The notes under the pieces: generated by a model
Seen by the model: the letters and a program-made list of their open reading frames with translations, nothing else
Database searches by the model: none
Told to the model about the DNA's origin: nothing
Source: Macrostomum lignano
Taxonomy: Eukaryota
Assembly (NCBI GenBank): GCA_002269645.1
Contig: NIVC01001838.1
Span: 124,001-188,000, forward strand
DNA length: 64,000 nucleotides
Direction: 5' to 3'
In this document: positions 27,145-56,542 of the stretch, in pieces
Layout of the letters: every line of letters starts with the position of its first letter
Numbering within the stretch: the stretch's first letter is position 1
Position numbers and translations under genes: made by a program

Positions 27145-28584
27145 TCAATTTTGTACAGGCAGCTTTTTCCCGGAAGACGGAGACTGGAAAAAGTCGGTGA
27201 TGGGGCGCCGCATTTTCTTCCCAGACTCGGCCGGAGATGCGGCGGAGGCTGAGGAGCCGCGAGCCCGCTTGGCCGATCCCGGGCGCTTGCGTCCAGCCTC
27301 ATCAGGTGTCGGAGGCTGGCTGGGTGGCGGGTCACAGTCGACTGGCAGAGCCTCGTGGCAGCAGAAGGCCGCCTCCTCGGCGATCTCCGCGAGCTCGGCA
27401 AAGCTGATGCCGAACAAAATCGGCTTCAGCCGCTGCACTTTTCTCTGCTGGCTCTCCTCGAACGCGCGCTGCCTCAGCTGCTGCCGCTTCTTCCTGGTTT
27501 CAGCATCCTCAGCCTCATCCTCAGCTTCCGCAGGGTTCTCGCCTTCGTCATCGCTCAGGTAGCCGTGGGGGACAACAAAGGCAGCCTCATCCTCGTCATC
27601 ATCATCCGACCCAGCCTCCTCTGGATCTCCCTCGGACCTGTCCAGATCCTCGCCCTCGCCCTCCTCCTCCCACTCGGCCTCGCTGTCAACATCGTAGTCC
27701 AGGGTGGCCGCGTCTCTGCTCAGCGGGTTCCGGCCGGAGATGGCGCTGCTCCGCCTGCCCCAGGTGCCAAAGTAGGCGGGCCTGTGGTTCTCGCAGAACT
27801 GCAACAGCTTGCACTTGCGCAGCGACTGCGTCTCCGTCACCATGACAACGTCGGGATCGGAGCCGCCTTGCAGGAACTCGCTAAGTGGCCAGGTCTGAGG
27901 GCAGCTGCGACCCCGGCGATGCTTCAGCTCAGTGAGGTAGGACTCAGCCTGCGGCGCTGCATCGCTGCTCAAAAACTGCTCAAGAGTATTTCTCTCCGAC
28001 TCAGTCAGCGGCTCCCTGCGAATCGCCGGGCACAGCCGGGCGTCTCGGCGCAGCGGAAACGGCATGAAGCGCCGCTTCTCCTCCGGCGCTGCCGCCTCCT
28101 CAGTCTGAATCGAACCCCCGACCTCCGACTGGGCTCCGCTGGAGGCTGCCGGCTTCTTGATGAAGAAGCTGGCCAGAAGACTCGCCTGCTTCTCCTTCTG
28201 CCTGCGCTCTTCTTCCTGCCTCTTTTGCTTCTCGTCCTCCTTGGCCTTCCTTTCCTCCTCTTTCGCCTTTCTCTCCTCCTCCTTGGCCTCCTTCAGCTTG
28301 GCTTTCTCTTCTTCTTTCGCTTTCCTCTCCTCCTCCTTGGCTTCTTTCAGCTTGGCCCGCTCCTCCTCTTTGGCCTTTTTCTCTTCCTCCTTCGCCTGTC
28401 GCTCCTCTTCCTTCTTGCGCAGCTCCTCCTCCTTCTTCAGCCGCTTCTCCTCCTCTCGCTTCTGCCGCTCCGCCTCCTTCGCCAGCCTCTCCGCCTCTTT
28501 TTGCAGCCGCTTGCGCTCGCGCTCCGCCCGCCTGGCGGCCTGCTCGAGCTCCCGCTGCTGCTTGCTGGTGTTGTGCGGACTGGC
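27145..28584 (-). CDS. CHAF1A: Chromatin assembly factor 1 subunit A (CAF-1 p150/Cac1), single large exon
   Basis: Open frame of 480 codons from acceptor TTCCAG|GCC at 28584 to TGA at 27145. It holds a K/E/R coiled coil (ERERKRLQKEAERLAKE...), PIP-like ASLLASFF, then KLLQFCENHRPAYFGTW, GRNPL, LDYDVDSEAEWEEEGEGEDL and FVVPHGYLSDDEG (CAF1A/ED domain). The supplied ORF covers only the last 306 aa. Confidence 0.93.
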   Translation of the reverse strand, partial: ASPHNTSKQQRELEQAARRAERERKRLQKEAERLAKEAERQKREEEKRLKKEEELRKKEEERQAKEEEKKAKEEERAKLKEAKEEERKAKEEEKAKLKEAKEEERKAKEEERKAKEDEKQKRQEEERRQKEKQASLLASFFIKKPAASSGAQSEVGGSIQTEEAAAPEEKRRFMPFPLRRDARLCPAIRREPLTESERNTLEQFLSSDAAPQAESYLTELKHRRGRSCPQTWPLSEFLQGGSDPDVVMVTETQSLRKCKLLQFCENHRPAYFGTWGRRSSAISGRNPLSRDAATLDYDVDSEAEWEEEGEGEDLDRSEGDPEEAGSDDDDEDEAAFVVPHGYLSDDEGENPAEAEDEAEDAETRKKRQQLRQRAFEESQQRKVQRLKPILFGISFAELAEIAEEAAFCCHEALPVDCDPPPSQPPTPDEAGRKRPGSAKRARGSSASAASPAESGKKMRRPITDFFQSPSSGKKLPVQN

Positions 28585-44336: not shown

Positions 44337-44727
44337 ATGGAATCGGCCATGGATGTAGACGATGCAGCTGCCACATTCAATGCCGAGGTTTCGCTGACTG
44401 CGCCAGCTCAGCAGCCGTCAGTGCCAGCCAGCGAGCTGCCCTGGATTGAAAAGTACAGGCCGACCCGCCTAGCCGAAATAGTTGGCAATGAGGACACGGT
44501 TGAACGGCTGGCCGTGTTTGCCAAGCAGGGCAACCTGCCCAATGTGATCCTGTGCGGCCCGCCGGGCATCGGCAAGACCACCAGCATTCTCTGTCTGGCC
44601 AGGGAGCAGCTGGGAGAGGCCTGCAAGGAGGCTGTGCTGGAATTAAACGCCTCTAATGATCGCGGTATTGAAGTTGTACGCGGTAAAATTAAAATGTTCG
44701 CCCAACGTCGGGTCACCCTGCCGCAGG
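44337..44727 (+). CDS. RFC2: Replication factor C subunit 2 (RFC40), exon 1
   Basis: [21 protein letters not shown], Walker [33 protein letters not shown]; donor G|GTGAG at 44728. Confidence 0.95.
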
Positions 44728-44875: not shown

Positions 44876-45201
44876 GCCAGCACAAGCTGGTAATTCTTGA
44901 CGAGGCGGACAGCATGACAGACGGCGCACAGCAGGCGCTGCGGCGCACAATGGAGATCTACTCGCGCACCACCCGGTTCGCGTTGGCTTGCAACGATTCG
45001 TCTAAGATCATCGAGCCGATACAGTCCAGGTGTGCCGTACTGCGCTACTCCAGGCTGACAGACGCCCAGCTGCTTGGCCGCCTCATCGAGGTCTGCCGGG
45101 CCGAGGGCGCCGTCTATACTGACAGGGGACTGGAGGCTGTGGCCTTTACTGCCCAGGGCGATCTGAGACAGGGGCTTAACAATTTGCAGGCGACTCTGCA
45201 G
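44876..45201 (+). CDS. RFC2: RFC2, exon 2
   Basis: TGCAG| acceptor; [37 protein letters not shown] (SRC motif), [13 protein letters not shown]; donor CAG|GT at 45202. Confidence 0.95.
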
Positions 45202-45287: not shown

Positions 45288-47783
45288 TGGTGTTTTATGA
45301 GATCTCACCCTCATCACTGGTGTTTTATGAGATGTCACCCTCATCACTGGTGTTTTGAGATCTCACCCCCATCACTGGTGTTTTATGAGATCTCACCCTC
45401 ATCACTGGCGTTTTATGAGATCTCACCCTGATCACTGGTGTTTTATGAGATCTCACCCTCATCACTGGTGTTTTATGAGATCTCACCCTCATCACTGGTG
45501 TTTTATGAGATCTCACCCTCATCACTGGTGTTTTATGAGATCTCACCCTCATCACTGGCGTTTTATGAGATCTCACCCTGAAACATCACTGGTGTTTTAT
45601 GAGATCTCACCCTCATCACTGGTGTTTTATGAGATCTCACCCTCATCACTGGCGTTTTATGAGATCTCACCCTCATCACTGGTGTTTTATGAGATCTCAC
45701 CCTCATCACTGGTGTTTTATGAGATCTCACCCTCATCACTGGTGTTTTATGAGATCTCACCCTCATCACTGGTGTTTTATGAGATCTCACCCTCATCACT
45801 GGTGTTTTATGAGATCTCACCCTCATCACTGGTGTTTTATGAGATCTCACCCTCATCACTGGTGTTTTATGAGATCTCACCCTCATCACTGGTGTTTTAT
45901 GAGATCTCACCCTCATCACTGGTGTTTTATGAGATCTCACCCTCATCACTGGCGTTTTATGAGATCTCACCCTGAAACATCACTGGTGTTTTATGAGATC
46001 TCACCCTCATCACTGGTGTTTTATGAGATCTCACCCTCATCACTGGTGTTTTATGAGATCTCACCCTCATCACTGGTGTTTTATGAGATCTCACCCTCAT
46101 CACTGGTGTTTTATGAGATCTCACCCTCATCACTGGTGTTTTATGAGATCTCACCCTCATCACTGGTGTTTTATGAGATCTCACCCTCATCACTGGCGTT
46201 TTATGAGATCTCACCCTGAAACATCACTGGTGTTTTATGAGATCTCACCCTCATCACTGGTGTTTTATGAGATCTCACCCTCATCACTGGCGTTTTATGA
46301 GATCTCACCCTGAAACATCACTGGTGTTTTATGAGATCTCACCCTCATCACTGGTGTTTTATGAGATCTCACCCTCATCACTGGTGTTTTATGAGATCTC
46401 ACCCTCATCACTGGTGTTTTATGAGATCTCACCCTCATCACTGGTGTTTTATGAGATCTCACCCTCATCACTGGCGTTTTATGAGATCTCACCCTCATCA
46501 CTGGTGTTTTATGAGATCTCACCCTCATCACTGGTGTTTTATGAGATCTCACCCTCATCACTGGTGTTTTATGAGATCTCACCCTCATCACTGGTGTTTT
46601 ATGAGATCTCACCCTCATCACTGGTGTTTTATGAGATCTCACCCTCATCACTGGTGTTTTATGAGATCTCACCCTCATCACTGGTGTTTTATGAGATCTC
46701 ACCCTCATCACTGGTGTTTTATGAGATCTCACCCTCATCACTGGTGTTTTATGAGATCTCACCCTCATCACTGGTGTTTTATGAGATCTCACCCTCATCA
46801 CTGGTGTTTTATGAGATCTCACCCTCATCACTGGTGTTTTATGAGATCTCACCCTCATCACTGGCGTTTTATGAGATCTCACCCTCATCACTGGTGTTTT
46901 ATGAGATCTCACCCTCATCACTGGTGTTTTATGAGATCTCACCCTCATCACTGGCGTTTTATGAGATCTCACCCTGATCACTGGTGTTTTATGAGATCTC
47001 ACCCTCATCACTGGTGTTTTATGAGATCTCACCCTCATCACTGGTGTTTTATGAGATCTCACCCTCATCACTGGTGTTTTATGAGATCTCACCCTCATCA
47101 CTGGCGTTTTATGAGATCTCACCCTGAAACATCACTGGTGTTTTATGAGATCTCACCCTCATCACTGGTGTTTTATGAGATCTCACCCTCATCACTGGCG
47201 TTTTATGAGATCTCACCCTCATCACTGGTGTTTTATGAGATCTCACCCTCATCACTGGTGTTTTATGAGATCTCACCCTCATCACTGGTGTTTTATGAGA
47301 TCTCACCCTCATCACTGGTGTTTTATGAGATCTCACCCTCATCACTGGTGTTTTATGAGATCTCACCCTCATCACTGGTGTTTTATGAGATCTCACCCTC
47401 ATCACTGGTGTTTTATGAGATCTCACCCTCATCACTGGTGTTTTATGAGATCTCACCCTCATCACTGGTGTTTTATGAGATCTCACCCTCATCACTGGTG
47501 TTTTATGAGATCTCACCCTCATCACTGGTGTTTTATGAGATCTCACCCTCATCACTGGTGTTTTATGAGATCTCACCCTCATCACTGGTGTTTTATGAGA
47601 TCTCACCCTCATCACTGGTGTTTTATGAGATCTCACCCTCATCACTGGTGTTTTATGAGATCTCACCCTCATCACTGGTGTTTTATGAGATCTCACCCTC
47701 ATCACTGGTGTTTTATGAGATCTCACCCTCATCACTGGTGTTTTATGAGATCTCACCCTCATCACTGGTGTTCTATGAGATCT
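45288..47783. repeat. 30-bp minisatellite (~83 copies) filling RFC2 intron 2
   Basis: Unit CATCACTGGTGTTTTATGAGATCTCACCCT. It contains the 10-bp palindrome TGAGATCTCA. Confidence 0.97.
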
Positions 47784-47829: not shown

Positions 47830-48148
47830 GGCTTCGGCTCTGTCACCGAGGACAATGTATTCAAAGTGTGCGACCACCCGAAAACTGTTGGCCCACTGCC
47901 AGGCCGGCGAGCTTGACCCGGCGCACAAGATTCTGCGCCACCTGTGGCACATGGGCTACTCAGCTGAGGACCTGGTCAGCATACTGTTCCGCGTGTGCAA
48001 GTCGCACCCGGACCTGTCCGAGGAGGTCAAACTGGGCATGGTGCGCGAGATTGGCATCACCCATATGCGAGTGATGGACGGGGTTGGCACCCTGTTGCAG
48101 CTGTCCGGCCTGCTGGCCAGGATGTGCCGCCTTCGACAGGCTGACTGA
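47830..48148 (+). CDS. RFC2: RFC2, exon 3 (terminal), frameshifted at ~47881
   Basis: CCCAG| acceptor; GFGSVTEDNVFKVCDHP, then in another frame KLLAHCQAGELDPAHKILRHLWHMGYSAEDL...EIGITHMRVMDGVGTLLQLSGLLARMC; TGA at 48146-48148. Spliced length 1036 nt is not a multiple of 3. Confidence 0.9.
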
Positions 48149-48271: not shown

Positions 48272-48492
48272 AAAGTTGATGCCTAAATAAATCGATTGTA
48301 TCACCCGGTTGCTTCTGTTCTATTGCATTCTTTTTAACATTTTCAAATCAGCGTTTTCTATATTAAAATTATTTGATTTAATCGGATAAAACTCTACTGG
48401 CTTCTGTCGATGTTAGTAGCAGTAGTAGCACACGAACACTGACTGTCCCACAGTACCTGCGTTTTTTTACGAGGCTTTGACTGTAGACTTGT

Positions 48493-49666
48493 GTCTGTCA
48501 TGAGACTGTTTTGTCTGTCATGAGACTGTTCTGTCTGTCATCGGGCTGTTCAGTCTGTCATGAGACTGTTCAGTCTGTCATGAGACTGTTCTGTCTGTCA
48601 TGAGACTGTTCTGTCTGTCATCGGGCTGTTCTGTCTGTCATCGGGCTGTTCTATCTGTCATGAGACTGTTCTGTCTGTCATCGGGCTGTTCTGTCTGTCA
48701 TGAGACTGTTCTGTCTGTCATGAGACTGTTCTGTCTGTCATGAGACTGTTCTGTCTGTCATGAGACTGTTCTGTCTGTCATGAGACTGTTCTGTCTGTCA
48801 TGAGACTGTTCTGTCTGTCATCGGGCTGTTCAGTCTGTCATGAGACTGTTCTGTCTGTCATGACGCTGTTCAGTCTGTCATGAGACTGTTCTGTCTGTCA
48901 TGAGACTGTTCTGTCTGTCATGACGCTGTTCAGTCTGTCATGAGACTGTTCTGTCTGTCATGAGACTGTTCTGTCTGTCATCGGGCTGTTTAGTCTGTCA
49001 TGAGACTGTTCTGTCTGTCATGACGCTGTTCAGTCTGTCATGAGACTGTTCTGTCTGTCATGAGACTGTTCTGTCTGTCATCGGGCTGTTCTGTCTGTCA
49101 TGAGACTGTTCTGTCTGTCATCGGGCTGTTCTGTCTGTCATGAGACTGTTCTGTCTGTCATGACGCTGTTCAGTCTGTCATGAGACTGTTCTGTCTGTCA
49201 TGACGCTGTTCAGTCTGTCATGAGACTGTTCTGTCTGTCATGAGACTGTTCTGTCTGTCATCGGGCTGTTCTGTCTGTCATGAGACTGTTCTGTCTGTCA
49301 TGAGACTGTTCTGTCTGTCATGAGACTGTTCTGTCTGTCATGAGACTGTTCTGTCTGTCATCGGGCTGTTCTGTCTGTCATGAGACTGTTCTGTCTGTCA
49401 TCGGGCTGTTCTGTCTGTCATGACGCTGTTCTGTCTGTCATGAGACTGTTCTGTCTGTCATGAGACTGTTCTGTCTGTCATGAGACTGTTCTGTCTGTCA
49501 TCGGGCTGTTCTGTCTGTCATGAGACTGTTCTGTCTGTCATCGGGCTGTTCTGTCTGTCATGAGACTGTTCTGTCTGTCATGAGACTGTTCTGTCTGTCA
49601 TGACGCTGTTCTGTCTGTCATGAGACTGTTCTGTCTGTCATGAGACTGTTCAGTCTGTCATGAGAC
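48493..49666. repeat. 20-bp minisatellite (~58 copies)
   Basis: Unit TGAGACTGTTCTGTCTGTCA with recurrent TCGGG- and TGACG- variants. Confidence 0.97.
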
Positions 49667-51448
49667 TTCTGTTGTATTCCCATAGTACAACTGGATCCGC
49701 TGTTTAAAGCTCAATGTGTGTACTGCATACACATCTATCTGCGCTGTCGCGACTCTTTCATCTCTACTCTTCTCAGCTCATCTTTACCTTATCCATGTTT
49801 AACAAATCCACTTTCTCCAGCCTTCTCCCATCTTATTTCTCTCCTTCATATCGAAGCCATAACTTCCACGACGACCTTCGAACACAACAGCGCTATCGGA
49901 AAGATCGCAACTGCAGGGGACACTCAGCAGCAAGAACAACAGCTCTCGAAAAGCAGATATGAGCAATTTTTGTCCAACTGCTGGGCGCAGTCGAACGACG
50001 CAGACAAAGATTCCATTTTGAAGAGTAACGAGTTTAAAAGAGAAATATTTGACGAATTAAACGGATTGACAAAAAAATTAAGTCAATTTTTCTGGCATGG
50101 ACCCTGGCTCCATAATAGCCGATAATTTGATAAATTGATACAGAACTCGAGGTAATCGTAATATCAAACGAAGTCAACTGACGCACTCAACAAGCACACG
50201 CAAATTAAACAGATTACCTAAGTATGGAGAAACTAAATAGCACCCACGTAGGTGAAATGCAATAATTAGCATGAAAATGTACCGATTTCAATGAAATAAA
50301 TTATATTCAATTTCAATCTCAATGAAATTATTTAATTTGCAAATAGCAAAGAAAAAAGTACTTTTAAGACACAGAAAATCCAAACAGCTGGAAATTACTC
50401 AAGTTAAACATGAATTAGCTAACATTTTAAGTGTAATTGAGACATCGAAGGATTCTATAAAAAATTTACATAAAATATAAAATAAACTTGAAAACTAATA
50501 GCAACAAACCAATTTCTTAGTATGATTCAATCCAACTCATGATCTTAAATTAAGGCGCCGAATTCTGTTAAATAAGTTGTGAGTGGCCAAACAGCCGGAG
50601 ACAAGTTCGGTGTCTGGAGCTCAAGGATGCATAGTAAATTGGTGATAATAAAGTTCTTGATTATGGTTTTTCGCTCGCTCTGATTCGGACCAGCACTTGT
50701 GAAAGAAGACTGGAGCTAGCTGAGCGAAAGAAGGGACGCAAAAGAAGAGCTCAAATGAACAAATTGACAGCCAGCCATCCGTTCAGCCGCTGAAAACAAT
50801 CGTTTTGGCCCGGTGACTGTCTGAACAGCCCCGGCTGAAATTAACCGTAGATGTCTCTCAGAGGGTTTCCCGGCTCTCACAGAGGGTTTTTTGCTTTCAC
50901 TGCATCAGAACTGGATACCAAATCAACTTATAAACTTGCATTTCTACCAAAAGCCATTTAGGCACAGAACAGCCGATCGGTAACATTGTGCGAAAGCAAT
51001 AAAGATCGCCAAAGCGACTTGCAATCTTATAAATCAAGCACAGGGGGGAGAGCATGGCAGTCAACTCAATATAGGCAGCAGCAGCAACTAGAGAGCGAGT
51101 TGCGAGTTCTGCGAGGAAGCTGTATTCGTATAAACATAGATCTTGAGGTGAAGCTCAGGTGGCGCTGTTGGAAGTTATCCTACAAGTCACAGGAGGCACT
51201 CATGCGGCAGACTGCAGTACCCAGTTGGCAGGAATGTTCCTGCAACAGCAGCATTTATTTGCATGGCAGTAATCCACTTCTGATAGCGGAACACTTATCT
51301 GAGGCTTTGGTAGATTGTCTTTTAATTCATTGCTCTAAATGATTTAAGTACTGTTCTGTTGCACGGGTTAAATACATAAAACCCAAGAGAAATGACACCT
51401 CGACTAGATACAGAATCTGATTGATCATTTCATCCATGCAGAGCTGCT

Positions 51449-51744
51449 ATGATGCTCAAGCTGGGCCTATTTCTGCTACTGCCGATGGCCTGGGGAACTG
51501 GTGACGCGATGCCGCAAAAACTACCGACTTCTCTGGCGTGCTCGGCAAGCGCTCGGAGCCCATCGCTATCCCAATTGAAGCTTTGCTGGCGCAGGACGAC
51601 GACGACTCCAAGCTACTTGAGGGATTCGAAGACGTCGCTACCGATCGACAATTGAAGAAGCGAGACGATTATGAATATGATTACGGATATGAATCTCGTA
51701 TGTCCGCTGGACTGCTCGGAAAGCGAAGCAGCTCCTTTACTTAA
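51449..51744 (+). CDS. Neuropeptide precursor (amidated peptides), split over two frames
   Basis: Frame A gives a signal-peptide-like MMLKLGLFLLLPMAWG. Frame B gives DFSGVL-GKR, an acidic spacer, KKR, and DDYEYDYGYESRMSAGLL-GKR, stop at 51744. One extra base near the A5 run (51516-51520) joins them into 98 aa. A 3' splice-site-like TTTCATCCATGCAG ends at 51441. Confidence 0.8.
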
Positions 51745-53109
51745 AGCAAGGAGAATGAGATTCGTGACTGAAACAATATTCTTATCTGCGTTTGAGAATT
51801 CGTAAAAAGATTGGAGAATAGAAAACTGATGAGCTAAAGCAAAGAACTTAAAAGCCAGTGAGTGTAACAATAAGACCTTCTTCGTGAAATACAGCCGCAA
51901 GAAGAGCAAATACGCCTCAGAAAATTAGAACCGGCGCGCTCCGCTGATTTATTTTGTTCTCGCAAAAACGTTTAACATAATTTATTCCAGTGTCGACTCA
52001 TTGTTGCATTTAATCTATTCTTGAGATAGTAATCTAATTAATTATAAAGTATAAAGCAATTATTTATTCATTCAAGTCCTCGCAGTCCGCGGACTACAAG
52101 GTCCTGTTTTACAGACGTTCAGGACGTATTTCAAATCGAAGCCCATTTAGTACGTACGTAGGCAGCATTTAGAAGCTGCACCATCATCCGATGGATCCAT
52201 CATTTTGAAGGCGGCACAGGAGACTTTGAAGATGAACCAGCCAGACTGTTGTTAAATGTGTCAGACGAGGACAAGCAAGTGGCTGTTGCTAAAGAAGCAG
52301 AGGCCCGTGGCCCAACTGTAAACTGTCAAACTGTCAAAGGTTTGTGCCAAAACTCCTGACTGCAGAGATACAGCGAAGCAAGGTACGAACTTGCCAAGCA
52401 GTGCTGCCAGAGAAGCAGACGGTCGCTAGTGACTCCTACATAGTCACATTGTGCCATGCAGCTCAAGGAGACCATCAAAAAGAGGAAAAGAGGTTCGGTA
52501 CGGTCATTAGGAGCATCCGGCTTCTTCACAGCAATGCTTTGGCGCACACGTGCCACAAGGGATCCAGGCAACCAGGATAAAGAGTGATTACACAGCAGGC
52601 AGTGCAGTTAGAAGCCGCCGGATCGCCGGAACTTCATGCGAAACTTTGATGCAAATTTCAGGACGAATTACAGTTGCATATAGTTGTTTTGTTTTAACGT
52701 ATTAAATTTACAGGTGTCTTATTGCATAGTATTAATCTGGAGAGTAATAATACTTAATTAATTAAAAATAGCTTAATGCTTAATTTCAGGCGAAATTGGG
52801 CACTAGTAGCCATCAACGGGTTTTGAAAAAAAATTATTAAATTGGGCAGCATGAGGAACAGGGCGAATTAAAAACATTATTTTTGCTACTAAATGTAGAT
52901 AAAATATTATCAGCTACAATTTTCTCACACCCCTACTTCAAGTAGTTTTTTAAATATTAGTTGTAACACAATAGTTAATGTCAAAGCGCATAGTAAAGCT
53001 CGTGCTGTTTATAACTGTCGCTGTTATCTTTGACAGCGCAGCTTGTCCAATTGTCAGCTGCTGTTCAATGTGCTGTCGAATATCTGTGGAGCAAGATGTC
53101 ACTCGAACA

Positions 53110-53619
53110 TTACGAGTAGATGATTGGAAAAGTTTTCTTTGCCTGGCCCTGGATGACCAGGCCCTGGATGACGGGCTCAAGGCTCGGCTGCTTCAGGCAG
53201 TCGTTGAGACTCTTGTTGTACAACGTCGAGACCTGGACCCTGACGGACGCTTCGGAGAGGCAGCTGGACGCCGCGCATGCCGTCCAGGCAGCGAGACCAA
53301 CGCCGCGCTCTACACGAGGTCGCGCCTGATGCGGCCTTCTGACCTGCTGCGCGGGCGGCGACTTCGACTGGCCGGCCACGTCATCCGGTCGGAGGCTCGC
53401 TGCCCTCGCAGGCTCGCTCGCTTGGCTCGCAGGCGAGGCCAAGGGCGAACGGCGAGATACCCTGACAGGCTTTTGACCGATGCTGGCGCCCCGAACCAAG
53501 CTGGGGGGAGGGGCTTTCTGAGGGCTATGGCCCCGAGACGCGCTCTCTGACTTCTCCCCCCCATTTCTGGCCACTGCCTGGCTGGCGGGTGAAGTACTTT
53601 GTTGTTGTTGTTGTTGTTG
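53110..53619 (+). mobile_element. 5'-truncated RTE-like non-LTR retrotransposon 3' end
   Basis: KARLLQAVVE/LLLYNVETWTLT, NAALY and RGRRLRLAGHVIR are post-RT LINE motifs, with frameshifts. Ends in a (GTT)n tail at 53598-53619. Confidence 0.75.
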
Positions 53620-55567: not shown

Positions 55568-55575
55568 GTGAGTCT

Positions 55576-56542
<967 letters not shown>

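What the first reader, a model, noticed from the sequence alone, without database searches (positions are those of the whole stretch)
51449..51744. Probable novel neuropeptide precursor yielding xGVL-amide and xGLL-amide peptides
Seen: signal-like N-terminus, two Gly-Lys-Arg sites, a KKR site and an acidic spacer. Known: G-KR marks convertase cleavage plus C-terminal amidation, and Tyr in acidic context is a sulfation substrate. Predicted products are ...TTDFSGVL-NH2 and DDYEYDYGYESRMSAGLL-NH2 (or MSAGLL-NH2). The DY-rich stretch recalls sulfated CCK/sulfakinin-type peptides, but the C-terminus does not; it is closer to buccalin- or LASGLV-amide-like endings. I cannot assign a family.
Basis: partly seen in the sequence, partly recalled or inferred. 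Interest (0 to 1): 0.7.

Follow-up and report, generated by a model that had tools for sequence, protein, structure and literature searches.

The report
Broken copy of flatworm neuropeptide gene

Summary
The window is Macrostomum lignano DNA, assembly Mlig_3_7, contig NIVC01001838.1. The signal peptide and TGDAMPQKLPT are in one frame. FSGVL-GKR, the acidic spacer, KKR, DDYEYDYGYESR-MSAGLL-GKR and the stop are in another. The two frames meet at T51529.

An exhaustive protein search found one real relative, M. lignano PAA49395.1 (Mlig004832.g1, 'hypothetical protein'). Its locus shares flanking DNA with the window. It encodes the same signal peptide, then RR-SIFSGVL-GKR, the same spacer and KKR, then 16 units of (A/D)MYSGLL-GKR. 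So the family is a classical multi-copy amidated neuropeptide precursor.

The window copy differs by a 34-nt gap that removes the RR site and shifts the frame. It keeps one unit instead of 16, and that unit has lost the invariant Tyr-Ser.

My estimates: young pseudogene 0.55; short gene made intact by one missing T (mis-assembly) 0.30. The closest described peptide is planarian SPP-13 FRGLLamide. The buccalin/allatostatin-A, tachykinin and CCK motifs are not met. Transcription could not be tested.

The parts
50671..53018 (+). Block of DNA homologous to the Mlig004832.g1 locus (L001 8854-13092): gene plus 5' and 3' flanks of a duplicated segment.
   Evidence: blastn gives 80-93% identity in collinear pieces. 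MAFFT alignment. No homology outside this block.
51440..51441 (+). AG of a probable 3' splice (cis or spliced-leader) acceptor, TTTCATCCATGCAG|AG, 7 nt before the ATG.
   Evidence: The motif is identical in both paralogues, although the surrounding flank is only about 78% identical. Splicing itself is inferred, not shown.
51449..51496 (+). Signal peptide MMLKLGLFLLLPMAWG (frame A). Predicted cleavage after A-W-G.
   Evidence: It has a Lys n-region, and a hydrophobic core with 9-residue Kyte-Doolittle means of about 1.7-2.4 that fall away after residue 10. Small residues sit at -3 and -1. It is 13/16 identical to the paralogue, and the changes are conservative (G/C, L/M, A/V). No SignalP was available.
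51497..51529 (+). TGDAMPQKLPT, frame A, the last in-frame segment after the signal peptide.
Evidence: The residues are identical in the paralogue.
51529..51530 (+). Frameshift junction. A 34-nt gap relative to the paralogue removes DEAGSTSRRSI plus 1 nt. T51529 serves as the last base of ACT (frame A) and the first base of TTC (frame B). The window has TT where TTT would keep the frame.
   Evidence: It is the only gap in 215 aligned coding nt.
51529..51552 (+). FSGVL-Gly-Lys-Arg (frame B). In the paralogue this is the amidated peptide SIFSGVLamide, preceded by RR.
   Evidence: Across FSGVLGKRSEPIAIPI there are 16 codons with 2 synonymous and 0 non-synonymous differences from the paralogue.
51553..51654 (+). 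Acidic spacer SEPIAIPIEALLAQDDDDSKLLEGFEDVATDRQL.
   Evidence: It aligns without gaps to the paralogue's SEPIAIPIKALLPQEEDDSKLIEGLEDVAIVPQS.
51655..51663 (+). KKR, a convertase cleavage site.
   Evidence: Conserved in the paralogue.
51664..51699 (+). DDYEYDYGYESR, a Tyr/acid-rich stretch containing a 12-nt tandem duplication. It replaces EANSGNRD of the paralogue.
   Evidence: The gaps relative to the paralogue are 9 nt and 3 nt, both in frame.
51700..51726 (+). A single degenerate repeat unit, MSAGLL-GKR. The paralogue has 16 units of MYSGLL-GK(R/K).
   Evidence: It differs from the commonest paralogue unit only by TAC>TCC (Tyr to Ser) and TCT>GCT (Ser to Ala), both non-synonymous. Tyr-Ser is invariant in all 16 paralogue units.
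51727..51744 (+). C-terminal tail SSSFT and TAA stop.
   Evidence: It aligns to the paralogue's SGSFASSKENNIRD*. The window has TAA where the paralogue has TCA.

Best explanation
The locus is a reduced, frame-shifted paralogue of the Macrostomum lignano neuropeptide precursor gene Mlig004832.g1 (PAA49395.1). It is most likely a young pseudogene.

How the family works (inferred from the anatomy): a signal peptide takes the precursor into the secretory pathway. Prohormone convertase then cuts at RR, KKR, KR and KK. A carboxypeptidase trims the basic residues, and the exposed Gly is converted to a C-terminal amide. The intact gene should yield one SIFSGVLamide and 16 (A/D)(M/V)YSGLLamides, which presumably act on a G-protein-coupled receptor.

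The window copy arose by duplication of a segment of about 2.3-4 kb. It stayed coding for most of its history. It then lost 15 of the 16 units, lost the Tyr-Ser of the remaining unit, and acquired a 34-nt deletion. That deletion removed the RR site and uncoupled the signal peptide from everything downstream. As assembled, the copy cannot deliver FSGVL-Gly or AGLL-Gly into the secretory pathway.
For: Shown:
- Organism and contig were identified.
- An exhaustive phmmer search of 1.84 billion representative proteins found one true relative, P0092, at E 3e-15. It is M. lignano PAA49395.1.
- The flanks are homologous as well as the coding region.
- The paralogue has 16 units. All but one of the nucleotide differences in the 21-nt unit core are synonymous, so YSGLL-Gly is under selection.
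- The window shows a single 34-nt gap exactly where the conserved reading frame changes.
- The window's one unit carries two non-synonymous changes in the invariant Tyr-Ser and no synonymous change.
- A coding history is supported. dN/dS is 0.43 over 72 codons. There is 1 gap event in 215 coding nt against 10 in 408 flank nt, P=0.03. FSGVLGKRSEPIAIPI has only synonymous changes.
- No assembly-error coincidence is needed if the 34-nt deletion is itself the lesion.
- The assembly was Pilon-polished with Illumina and RNA-seq reads (PMC5730564), so leftover 1-nt errors in non-repetitive sequence should be uncommon.
- A neural PC2 homologue whose RNAi knock-down killed hatchlings exists in M. lignano (PMC4490696).

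Inferred: the processing steps, the receptor, and the direction of the changes.
Against: - The gap is 33+1 nt, and the junction is a T-run (TT where TTT would restore the frame). One missing base would restore a 98-residue precursor.
- The same assembly shows two other 1-nt homopolymer frameshifts that look like artefacts. One is A4 where A3 restores a full, canonical RFC small subunit, at window 47881-47884. The other is A2 where A3 is expected, inside the paralogue's own repeat array, with five perfect units continuing in the new frame.
- All other indels in the window copy's coding region are multiples of three: 9 nt, 3 nt, and the loss of the array.
- No read-level or RNA evidence could be examined.
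Confidence: 0.55

Rival explanations
1. Intact minor paralogue. The deletion is really 33 nt and in frame, and the assembly dropped one T at the junction. The gene would then encode a 98-residue precursor giving an N-terminally extended FSGVLamide (TGDAMPQKLPTFSGVLamide, because the RR site is gone) and DDYEYDYGYESRMSAGLLamide. It would be a sub- or neo-functionalised sister of the 16-copy gene.
For: - The junction is a T-run, and TTT restores a single ORF.
- Two other probable 1-nt homopolymer errors occur in the same assembly.
- The coding region is depleted of indels, and the remaining ones are in frame.
- The signal peptide, both GKR sites and KKR are intact. FSGVLGKR shows only a synonymous change.
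- The lack of annotation is uninformative. The annotation pipeline judged coding potential with TransDecoder and excluded non-coding transcripts from the GenBank submission. From my own knowledge, TransDecoder's default minimum ORF is 100 residues. The ORFs here are 68 residues as assembled and 98 residues if repaired.
Against: - It requires an assembly error to fall exactly on the indel junction, in polished, non-repetitive sequence.
- The surviving unit has lost the Tyr-Ser that is invariant in 16 of 16 units of the paralogue.
- There is no basic residue at P4, P6 or P8 before ESR|MS. By the usual monobasic-cleavage rule (my own knowledge), the short MSAGLLamide would not be released.
Confidence: 0.3
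2. The family is real but not neuronal. The peptides would be secreted products of gland or epidermal cells, for example defensive, adhesive-gland or pheromonal amidated peptides, rather than neuropeptides.
For: No expression data could be examined. Multi-copy amidated peptide precursors also occur in frog skin secretions (papers that surfaced). In the planarian, several prohormone genes are expressed outside the CNS (PMC2953531).
Against: The peptides are short (7 residues), uncharged and invariant, flanked by dibasic sites with Gly. That is the standard neuropeptide design. The closest described peptide, FRGLLamide, comes from a planarian prohormone catalogue.
Confidence: 0.07
3. This is an intact, family-less precursor yielding ...TTDFSGVL-NH2 and a sulfated, CCK-like DDYEYDYGYESRMSAGLL-NH2.
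For: The processing sites are present, and Tyr residues sit in an acidic context.
Against: - 'TTD' is an out-of-frame reading of conserved KLPT codons.
- A paralogue and a plausible planarian relative exist.
- The DY stretch has no counterpart in the paralogue and contains a 12-nt duplication.
- The C-terminus has nothing in common with CCK/sulfakinin.
Confidence: 0.03
4. Chance ORF with no gene.
For: None, beyond the absence of annotation and of database hits in the word-indexed search.
Against: It is the only such segment in the window. It has a paralogue with 73% amino-acid identity over the aligned positions, and coding sequence is conserved above flank level.
Confidence: 0.01

Closest known systems
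Macrostomum lignano BOX15_Mlig004832g1 (PAA49395.1, 'hypothetical protein, partial'; contig NIVC01003891.1)
   Same: - The signal peptide is the same (13/16 residues), and TGDAMPQKLPT is identical.
- FSGVL-GKR-SEPIAIPI, the acidic spacer, KKR and the GKR-S(G/S)SF tail are shared.
- The 5' and 3' flanking DNA is homologous, and the AG acceptor before the ATG is conserved.
   Different: - The paralogue has RR-SI before FSGVL and 16 units of (A/D)(M/V)YSGLL-GK(R/K).
- The window copy has a 34-nt gap with a frameshift, one MSAGLL unit and a DY-rich insert.
- The paralogue has its own 1-nt frameshift in unit 11, which is probably why it was deposited as partial.
Schmidtea mediterranea SPP-13 (secreted peptide prohormone-13; FRGLLamide x2, confirmed by MS; Collins et al. 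2010, PMC2953531 supplement)
   Same: It is a flatworm prohormone with a signal peptide, an acidic spacer, then KK-FRGLL-GKR units. The peptide form is aromatic-x-G-L-L-NH2, like YSGLL-NH2 (and FSGVL-NH2). Pairwise BLASTP against P0092 gives E 2e-4, with 34% identity over 65 residues.
   Different: - Position -4 is Arg rather than Ser.
- Only two units are known, and there is no N-terminal FSGVL-type peptide.
- The similarity rests largely on the repeated motif, and the E-value is for one comparison only.
- The database-wide search did not link the two.
- The window's own unit (SAGLL) lacks the aromatic residue.
Buccalin / allatostatin-A family
   Same: - Multi-copy precursors of short amidated peptides that end in Leu-NH2, with an aromatic residue at -5.
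- Amidation is essential for receptor activation (PMC12509031).
- Buccalin A, recalled from memory as GMDSLAFSGGL-NH2, ends F-S-G-G-L. Compare F-S-G-V-L and Y-S-G-L-L here.
- AstA-like receptors exist in flatworms, with no ligand reported in that study (PMC6114109).
- An AstA/buccalin precursor is reported in a polyclad flatworm (PMC10396302).
   Different: The stated family motif, Y/F-X-F-G-L/I-NH2, is not met, because there is no F-G-L. No precursor-level similarity was found, and Pfam and the database searches gave nothing.
LASGLVamide (molluscs; 'LASGVamide' in a polyclad flatworm larva)
   Same: The ending is S-G-L-V-NH2 (for example MMDPLASGLVa in oyster), against S-G-L-L-NH2 and S-G-V-L-NH2 here. 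Its function and receptor are unknown (PMC4200219, PMC12564202, PMC10396302).
   Different: No aromatic residue precedes the motif. The copy number of the molluscan precursors was not checked. No sequences were available to align, so the resemblance is four residues only.
Tachykinins (FXGLMamide; protostome FXGXRamide)
   Same: The pattern is aromatic-X-G-L-(M/L)-NH2. Zebrafish NKBb ends FVGLLamide. Protostome tachykinin precursors are multi-copy (my own knowledge). The 2019 review found no tachykinin reported in flatworms (PMC6880623).
   Different: The last residue is Leu, not Met or Arg. Spiralian tachykinins end in Arg-NH2. There is no receptor or precursor evidence.
CCK / sulfakinin
   Same: Tyr residues in an acidic context upstream of an amidated C-terminus.
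   Different: The C-terminus (AGLL-NH2) is unrelated to ...Y(SO3)GHMRF-NH2 or ...WMDF-NH2. The DY stretch is absent from the paralogue and lies in spacer position.

Membership tests
Amidated neuropeptide (prohormone) precursor, generic | N-terminal signal peptide | tested here: met
   MMLKLGLFLLLPMAWG has Lys4, a hydrophobic core and A-x-G before the predicted cut, and it is conserved in the paralogue. This is a sequence rule only; SignalP was not available.
Amidated neuropeptide (prohormone) precursor, generic | Peptides flanked by di- or tribasic sites, with C-terminal Gly as amide donor | tested here: met
   GKR lies at 51544-51552 and 51718-51726, and KKR at 51655-51663.
Amidated neuropeptide (prohormone) precursor, generic | One continuous ORF joining the signal peptide to the peptides | tested here: not met
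   The frame changes at T51529. The ATG frame ends at 51655, and the peptide frame has a stop at 51502-51504.
Amidated neuropeptide (prohormone) precursor, generic | Transcribed in neurons or endocrine cells; peptides detectable | not testable with these tools
   No read, expression or peptidome data could be reached. Exact-product look-ups of both 68-residue ORFs found nothing.
M. lignano Mlig004832 (MYSGLLamide/SIFSGVLamide) gene family | Sequence homology of the precursor and of the flanking DNA | tested here: met
   phmmer E 3e-15. 73% amino-acid identity over aligned positions. About 90% nucleotide identity in coding sequence, with collinear homologous flanks.
M. lignano Mlig004832 (MYSGLLamide/SIFSGVLamide) gene family | Tandem array of (M/V)YSGLL-GK(R/K) units | tested here: not met
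   The window has one unit, MSAGLL-GKR, with Tyr-Ser replaced. The paralogue has 16.
Planarian SPP-13 (FRGLLamide) | Peptide ending aromatic-x-G-L-L-NH2, released from KK/KR...GKR | tested here: inconclusive
   The paralogue's YSGLL-GKR fits. The window's units are F-S-G-V-L and S-A-G-L-L.
Planarian SPP-13 (FRGLLamide) | Precursor-level homology | tested here: inconclusive
   Pairwise BLASTP E 2e-4 against P0092, driven mainly by the repeats. It was not recovered in the database-wide search.
Buccalin / allatostatin-A | C-terminal Y/F-X-F-G-L/I-NH2 | tested here: not met
   The endings are FSGVL, SAGLL and (in the paralogue) YSGLL, with no F-G-L. The motif is as stated in PMC12509031.
Buccalin / allatostatin-A | Activates an AstA/buccalin-type (galanin/kisspeptin-related) receptor | not testable with these tools
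   This needs receptor expression assays.
Tachykinin | C-terminal FXGLM-NH2 (deuterostome) or FXGXR-NH2 (protostome) | tested here: not met
   The terminal residue is Leu. Only the atypical zebrafish NKBb (FVGLLamide) matches.
CCK / sulfakinin | Sulfated Tyr a fixed distance from a C-terminal ...MRF-NH2 or ...WMDF-NH2 | tested here: not met
   The C-terminus is AGLL-NH2, and the Tyr residues are 9-15 residues from it.
LASGLVamide | C-terminal (L)ASGL(V/I)-NH2 | tested here: inconclusive
   There is a three- to four-residue resemblance only (SGLL, SGVL, AGLL). No precursor sequences were available for alignment.

The most novel reading that the evidence does not exclude
The peptides of this family share the form [F/Y]-x-G-[L/V]-L-NH2 (MYSGLLamide and SIFSGVLamide here, with planarian FRGLLamide). 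They could be the flatworm branch of an ancient bilaterian signalling system, most plausibly buccalin/allatostatin-A-type, or alternatively tachykinin-type. That would supply a ligand for flatworm receptors that are still orphan. In this reading the window copy is not dead. It would be an intact, neofunctionalised sister gene making an N-terminally extended FSGVLamide and a Tyr-rich, possibly sulfated AGLLamide.
Probability: 0.12. Interest if true: 0.6.

Novelty: new member of a known kind. Interest (0 to 1): 0.35.

Why it matters
M. lignano is a laboratory model for regeneration, stem cells and reproduction, and knock-down of its PC2 homologue killed hatchlings (PMC4490696). A 16-copy precursor of an invariant amidated heptapeptide is likely to be a prominent signalling gene. 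In the public record it is only a truncated 'hypothetical protein', and I found no paper text naming its peptides.

Recognising the family gives concrete masses for peptidomics and concrete ligands for receptor de-orphanisation in flatworms. In liver fluke, allatostatin-like receptors were reported without a known flatworm ligand (PMC6114109), and a 2019 review found no flatworm tachykinin (PMC6880623).

The window locus itself matters less. It is a worked example of how duplicated neuropeptide genes decay, or slim down, in a recently polyploid genome. It also shows that 1-nt frameshifts in this assembly cannot be read at face value.

Tried and rejected
That null was misleading, because the tool missed P0092 although it shares 9- and 15-residue exact words. 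The exhaustive search found it.
- Exact-product look-ups found nothing on record for the two 68-residue ORFs or for two neighbouring ORFs.
I did not try them by any other route. As a result, the near-identical copy of this region on NIVC01000142.1 could not be reached, because the candidate lies about 11 kb beyond the fetched flank.
- A profile search with both paralogues added only two JGI proteins with GS(M/L)RGLL-GKR repeats, similar in the repeat alone.
- Pfam gave no family. The ITAM hit on P0092 is a YxxL-repeat artefact.
- Rfam found nothing in the window.
- There is no second copy inside the window.
- Literature strings MYSGLL, SIFSGVL, Mlig004832, YSGLL, SGLLG and GLLamide found no flatworm paper text.
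- McVeigh et al. 2009 is not held and I did not look up Koziol et al. 2016, so prior description there cannot be excluded.
- A mini-intron as the cause of the frame change is rejected, because there is no AG between 51502 and 51530.
- A spliced-leader ATG read in frame from the acceptor is rejected, because it meets the stop at 51502-51504.
- CCK/sulfakinin kinship is rejected on the C-terminus.

Full report
**Where the window comes from.** A CAF-1 p150-like ORF in the window matched a Macrostomum lignano protein at about 100% identity. The exact product of the window's copy is carried by two contigs of assembly GCA_002269645.1 (Mlig_3_7). One of them, NIVC01001838.1, is 100% identical to the window over 21,425 nt, so record coordinate = window + 124,000. 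The other, NIVC01000142.1, is a 91-99.5% similar copy of the region. This fits the known redundancy of this neopolyploid genome. Mlig_3_7 is a PacBio/Canu assembly polished with Pilon. Its annotation comes from genome-guided transcripts, with coding potential judged by TransDecoder, and non-coding transcripts were left out of the GenBank submission (PMC5730564).

**The observation.** All listed elements are present at the stated coordinates:
- signal-like MMLKLGLFLLLPMAWG, 51449-51496
- FSGVL-GKR, 51529-51552
- a 34-residue acidic spacer
- KKR, 51655-51663
- DDYEYDYGYESR
- MSAGLL-GKR, 51700-51726
- SSSFT and the stop, ending at 51744

In six-frame translation of the whole window, this is the only stop-free segment with two GKR motifs 20-120 residues apart. 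The elements nevertheless sit in two frames. The ATG frame continues into unrelated sequence and stops at 51653-51655. The peptide frame has a stop at 51502-51504.

**The relative that explains it.** The word-indexed search with a repaired protein found nothing. An exhaustive phmmer search of 1.84 billion cluster representatives, using the 79 residues of the peptide frame, found one true hit, P0092, at E 3e-15. P0092 is M. lignano PAA49395.1, 'hypothetical protein BOX15_Mlig004832g1, partial', on contig NIVC01003891.1.

Its locus (L001) is homologous to window 50671-53018, including non-coding flanks and a conserved TTTCATCCATGCAG|AG just before the ATG. The reading is:

MMLKLCLFLLMPMVWG-TGDAMPQKLPTDEAGSTS-RR-SIFSGVL-GKR-SEPIAIPIKALLPQEEDDSKLIEGLEDVAIVPQS-KKR-EANSGNR-

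This is followed by 16 units of (A/D)(M/V)YSGLL-GK(R/K) and then SGSFASSKENNIRD*. Seven nucleotide variants of the 21-nt unit core occur. All differences but one (Met/Val) are synonymous, so YSGLL-Gly is what selection preserves.

This is the textbook design of a multi-copy amidated neuropeptide precursor. A neural PC2 homologue whose knock-down killed hatchlings is documented in this species (PMC4490696).

L001 carries its own 1-nt loss (GGAAGCG where GGAAAGCG is expected) in unit 11. Five perfect units continue in the shifted frame after it. That probably explains the 'partial' deposit.

**What the window copy is.** Four differences separate it from L001.
- A single 34-nt gap lies between CCGAC and TTCTCTGGC. 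It removes DEAGSTSRRSI plus one base.
- One unit stands where L001 has 16.
- That unit reads MSAGLL. It differs from the commonest L001 unit only by TAC>TCC and TCT>GCT, which change the Tyr-Ser invariant in all 16 L001 units.
- A Tyr/acid-rich insert contains a 12-nt duplication. Its gaps against L001 are 9 and 3 nt, both in frame.

The conserved reading frame changes exactly at the 34-nt junction. Downstream, FSGVLGKRSEPIAIPI shows two synonymous and no non-synonymous differences. A repaired product would be ...QKLPTFSGVL-NH2.

**Was it ever a working gene, and is it now?**
- Over the 72 alignable codons from ATG to KKR, dN=0.084, dS=0.196 and dN/dS=0.43. That is 9 synonymous of 22 changes, one-sided P=0.06.
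- The MAFFT alignment has 10 gap events in 408 aligned upstream nt at 78% identity. The coding part has 1 gap event in 215 nt at 90% identity, P=0.03.
- So the copy was held open for most of the time since duplication.

On the present state the evidence is divided.

For an artefact:
- The gap is 33+1 nt, and the junction is TT where TTT restores the frame.
- The same assembly has two other artefact-like 1-nt homopolymer frameshifts. One is in the RFC small-subunit gene at 47881-47884, where removing one A restores a complete canonical C-terminus. The other is in L001's repeat array.

For a real lesion:
- The error would have to fall exactly on the indel junction, in polished, non-repetitive sequence.
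- The surviving unit has lost its conserved core, the RR site is gone, and the array is gone. All of this fits relaxed constraint in a genome with extra copies.

I put a real frameshift (young pseudogene) at about 0.55 and an intact short paralogue at about 0.30. The absence of an annotated gene says little. From my own knowledge, TransDecoder's default minimum ORF is 100 residues. ORFs of 68 residues, or 98 if repaired, would then count as non-coding, and non-coding transcripts were excluded from the submission.

**Predicted products if intact (inference).** The products would be TGDAMPQKLPTFSGVLamide, the spacer peptide, DDYEYDYGYESRMSAGLLamide and SSSFT. The short MSAGLLamide is unlikely, because no basic residue lies at P4, P6 or P8 of the ESR|M site. 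In L001 the corresponding Arg has Arg at P8 (rule from my own knowledge). Tyr sulfation is possible in principle but has no supporting evidence.

**Comparison with known families.**
- Pfam has no match.
- The closest described peptide is planarian SPP-13: KK-FRGLL-GKR-VHA-KR-FRGLL-G, with FRGLLamide confirmed by mass spectrometry and filed under 'miscellaneous amidated peptides' (PMC2953531 supplement). Pairwise BLASTP against P0092 gives E 2e-4. That is suggestive, not proof.
- A profile search also pulled two JGI proteins with about ten GS(M/L)RGLL-GKR units each. These look like SPP-13-type RGLLamide precursors.
- The buccalin/AstA motif Y/F-X-F-G-L/I-NH2 (PMC12509031) is not met. Buccalin A as I recall it (…FSGGL-NH2) does resemble FSGVL and YSGLL.
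- AstA-like receptors without a reported ligand exist in flatworms (PMC6114109). AstA/buccalin and 'LASGVamide' precursors are reported in a polyclad larva (PMC10396302, PMC13551398).
- Tachykinin motifs are not met, except for the atypical zebrafish FVGLLamide. The 2019 review found no flatworm tachykinin (PMC6880623).
- CCK/sulfakinin is excluded by the C-terminus.
- No held paper text contains MYSGLL, SIFSGVL or Mlig004832. McVeigh 2009 could not be read and I did not look up Koziol 2016.

**Verdict.** The interesting gene is the 16-copy MYSGLLamide/SIFSGVLamide paralogue on another contig, which is hidden in the public record as a truncated hypothetical protein. The window locus is its reduced, frame-shifted duplicate. 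It is a new member of a known kind and of moderate interest. The decisive test, read-level inspection of one T-run, is simple.

Noticed in passing
window 44337-44727, 44876-45201, 47830-~48150 (+); A-run at 47881-47884: Replication factor C small-subunit gene in three exons. As assembled, it frameshifts in CCGAAAACTG. Removing one A restores a complete canonical C-terminus (...KVCDHPKLLAHCQAGELDPAHKILRHLWHMGYSAEDL...). This is either a homopolymer assembly error or a broken redundant copy.
   Followed up: partly
L001 10571-10600 (contig NIVC01003891.1): The intact-looking 16-unit paralogue has a 1-nt loss (GGAAGCG where GGAAAGCG is expected) in unit 11. Five perfect MYSGLL-GKR units continue in the shifted frame. 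The GenBank protein PAA49395.1 stops at unit 9-10 and is flagged partial.
   Followed up: yes
P0094 / P0095 (JGI sample 3300030741, locus L002 98-787): Two environmental sequences encode precursors with about ten GS(M/L)RGLL-GKR units each. These are RGLLamide peptides like planarian SPP-13 FRGLLamide. The source organism is unknown.
   Followed up: partly
window 51052-51240 and 50671-50869: Two upstream non-coding blocks are 83-85% identical to the paralogous locus (L001 9492-9689 and 8854-9056), with a GTGAAG donor-like site at about 51149. They may be a 5' UTR exon or a promoter of the neuropeptide gene.
   Followed up: no
window 45288-47783, 48492-49667, 55573-56542: Three large tandem arrays: 30-nt unit x83 (inside the RFC intron), 20-nt unit x59, and an 8-nt TCTATCTA unit x121. 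The last lies in the intron of an sFRP/Frizzled-CRD gene and reads through as a spurious 536-residue ORF.
   Followed up: partly
window 27145-28569 (-); L003, L005: The CAF-1 p150-like gene is present in at least three copies in the assembly (NIVC01001838.1, NIVC01000142.1, NIVC01000888.1). They are 98.4-100% identical with no indels between them. The NIVC01000888.1 copy sits among different neighbouring genes.
   Followed up: partly
tool behaviour: The word-indexed homology search returned no hit for a query that shares 9- and 15-residue exact words with a protein present in its own collection (P0092). Its negative results for short, low-complexity precursors should not be trusted.
   Followed up: yes
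window 52978-53550 (+): A 190-residue ORF whose C-terminal half (…LRLAGHVIRSEARCP…GRTARYPDRLL…) looks like the tail of a LINE-type reverse transcriptase. This judgement is from memory only. No exact product is on record.
   Followed up: no
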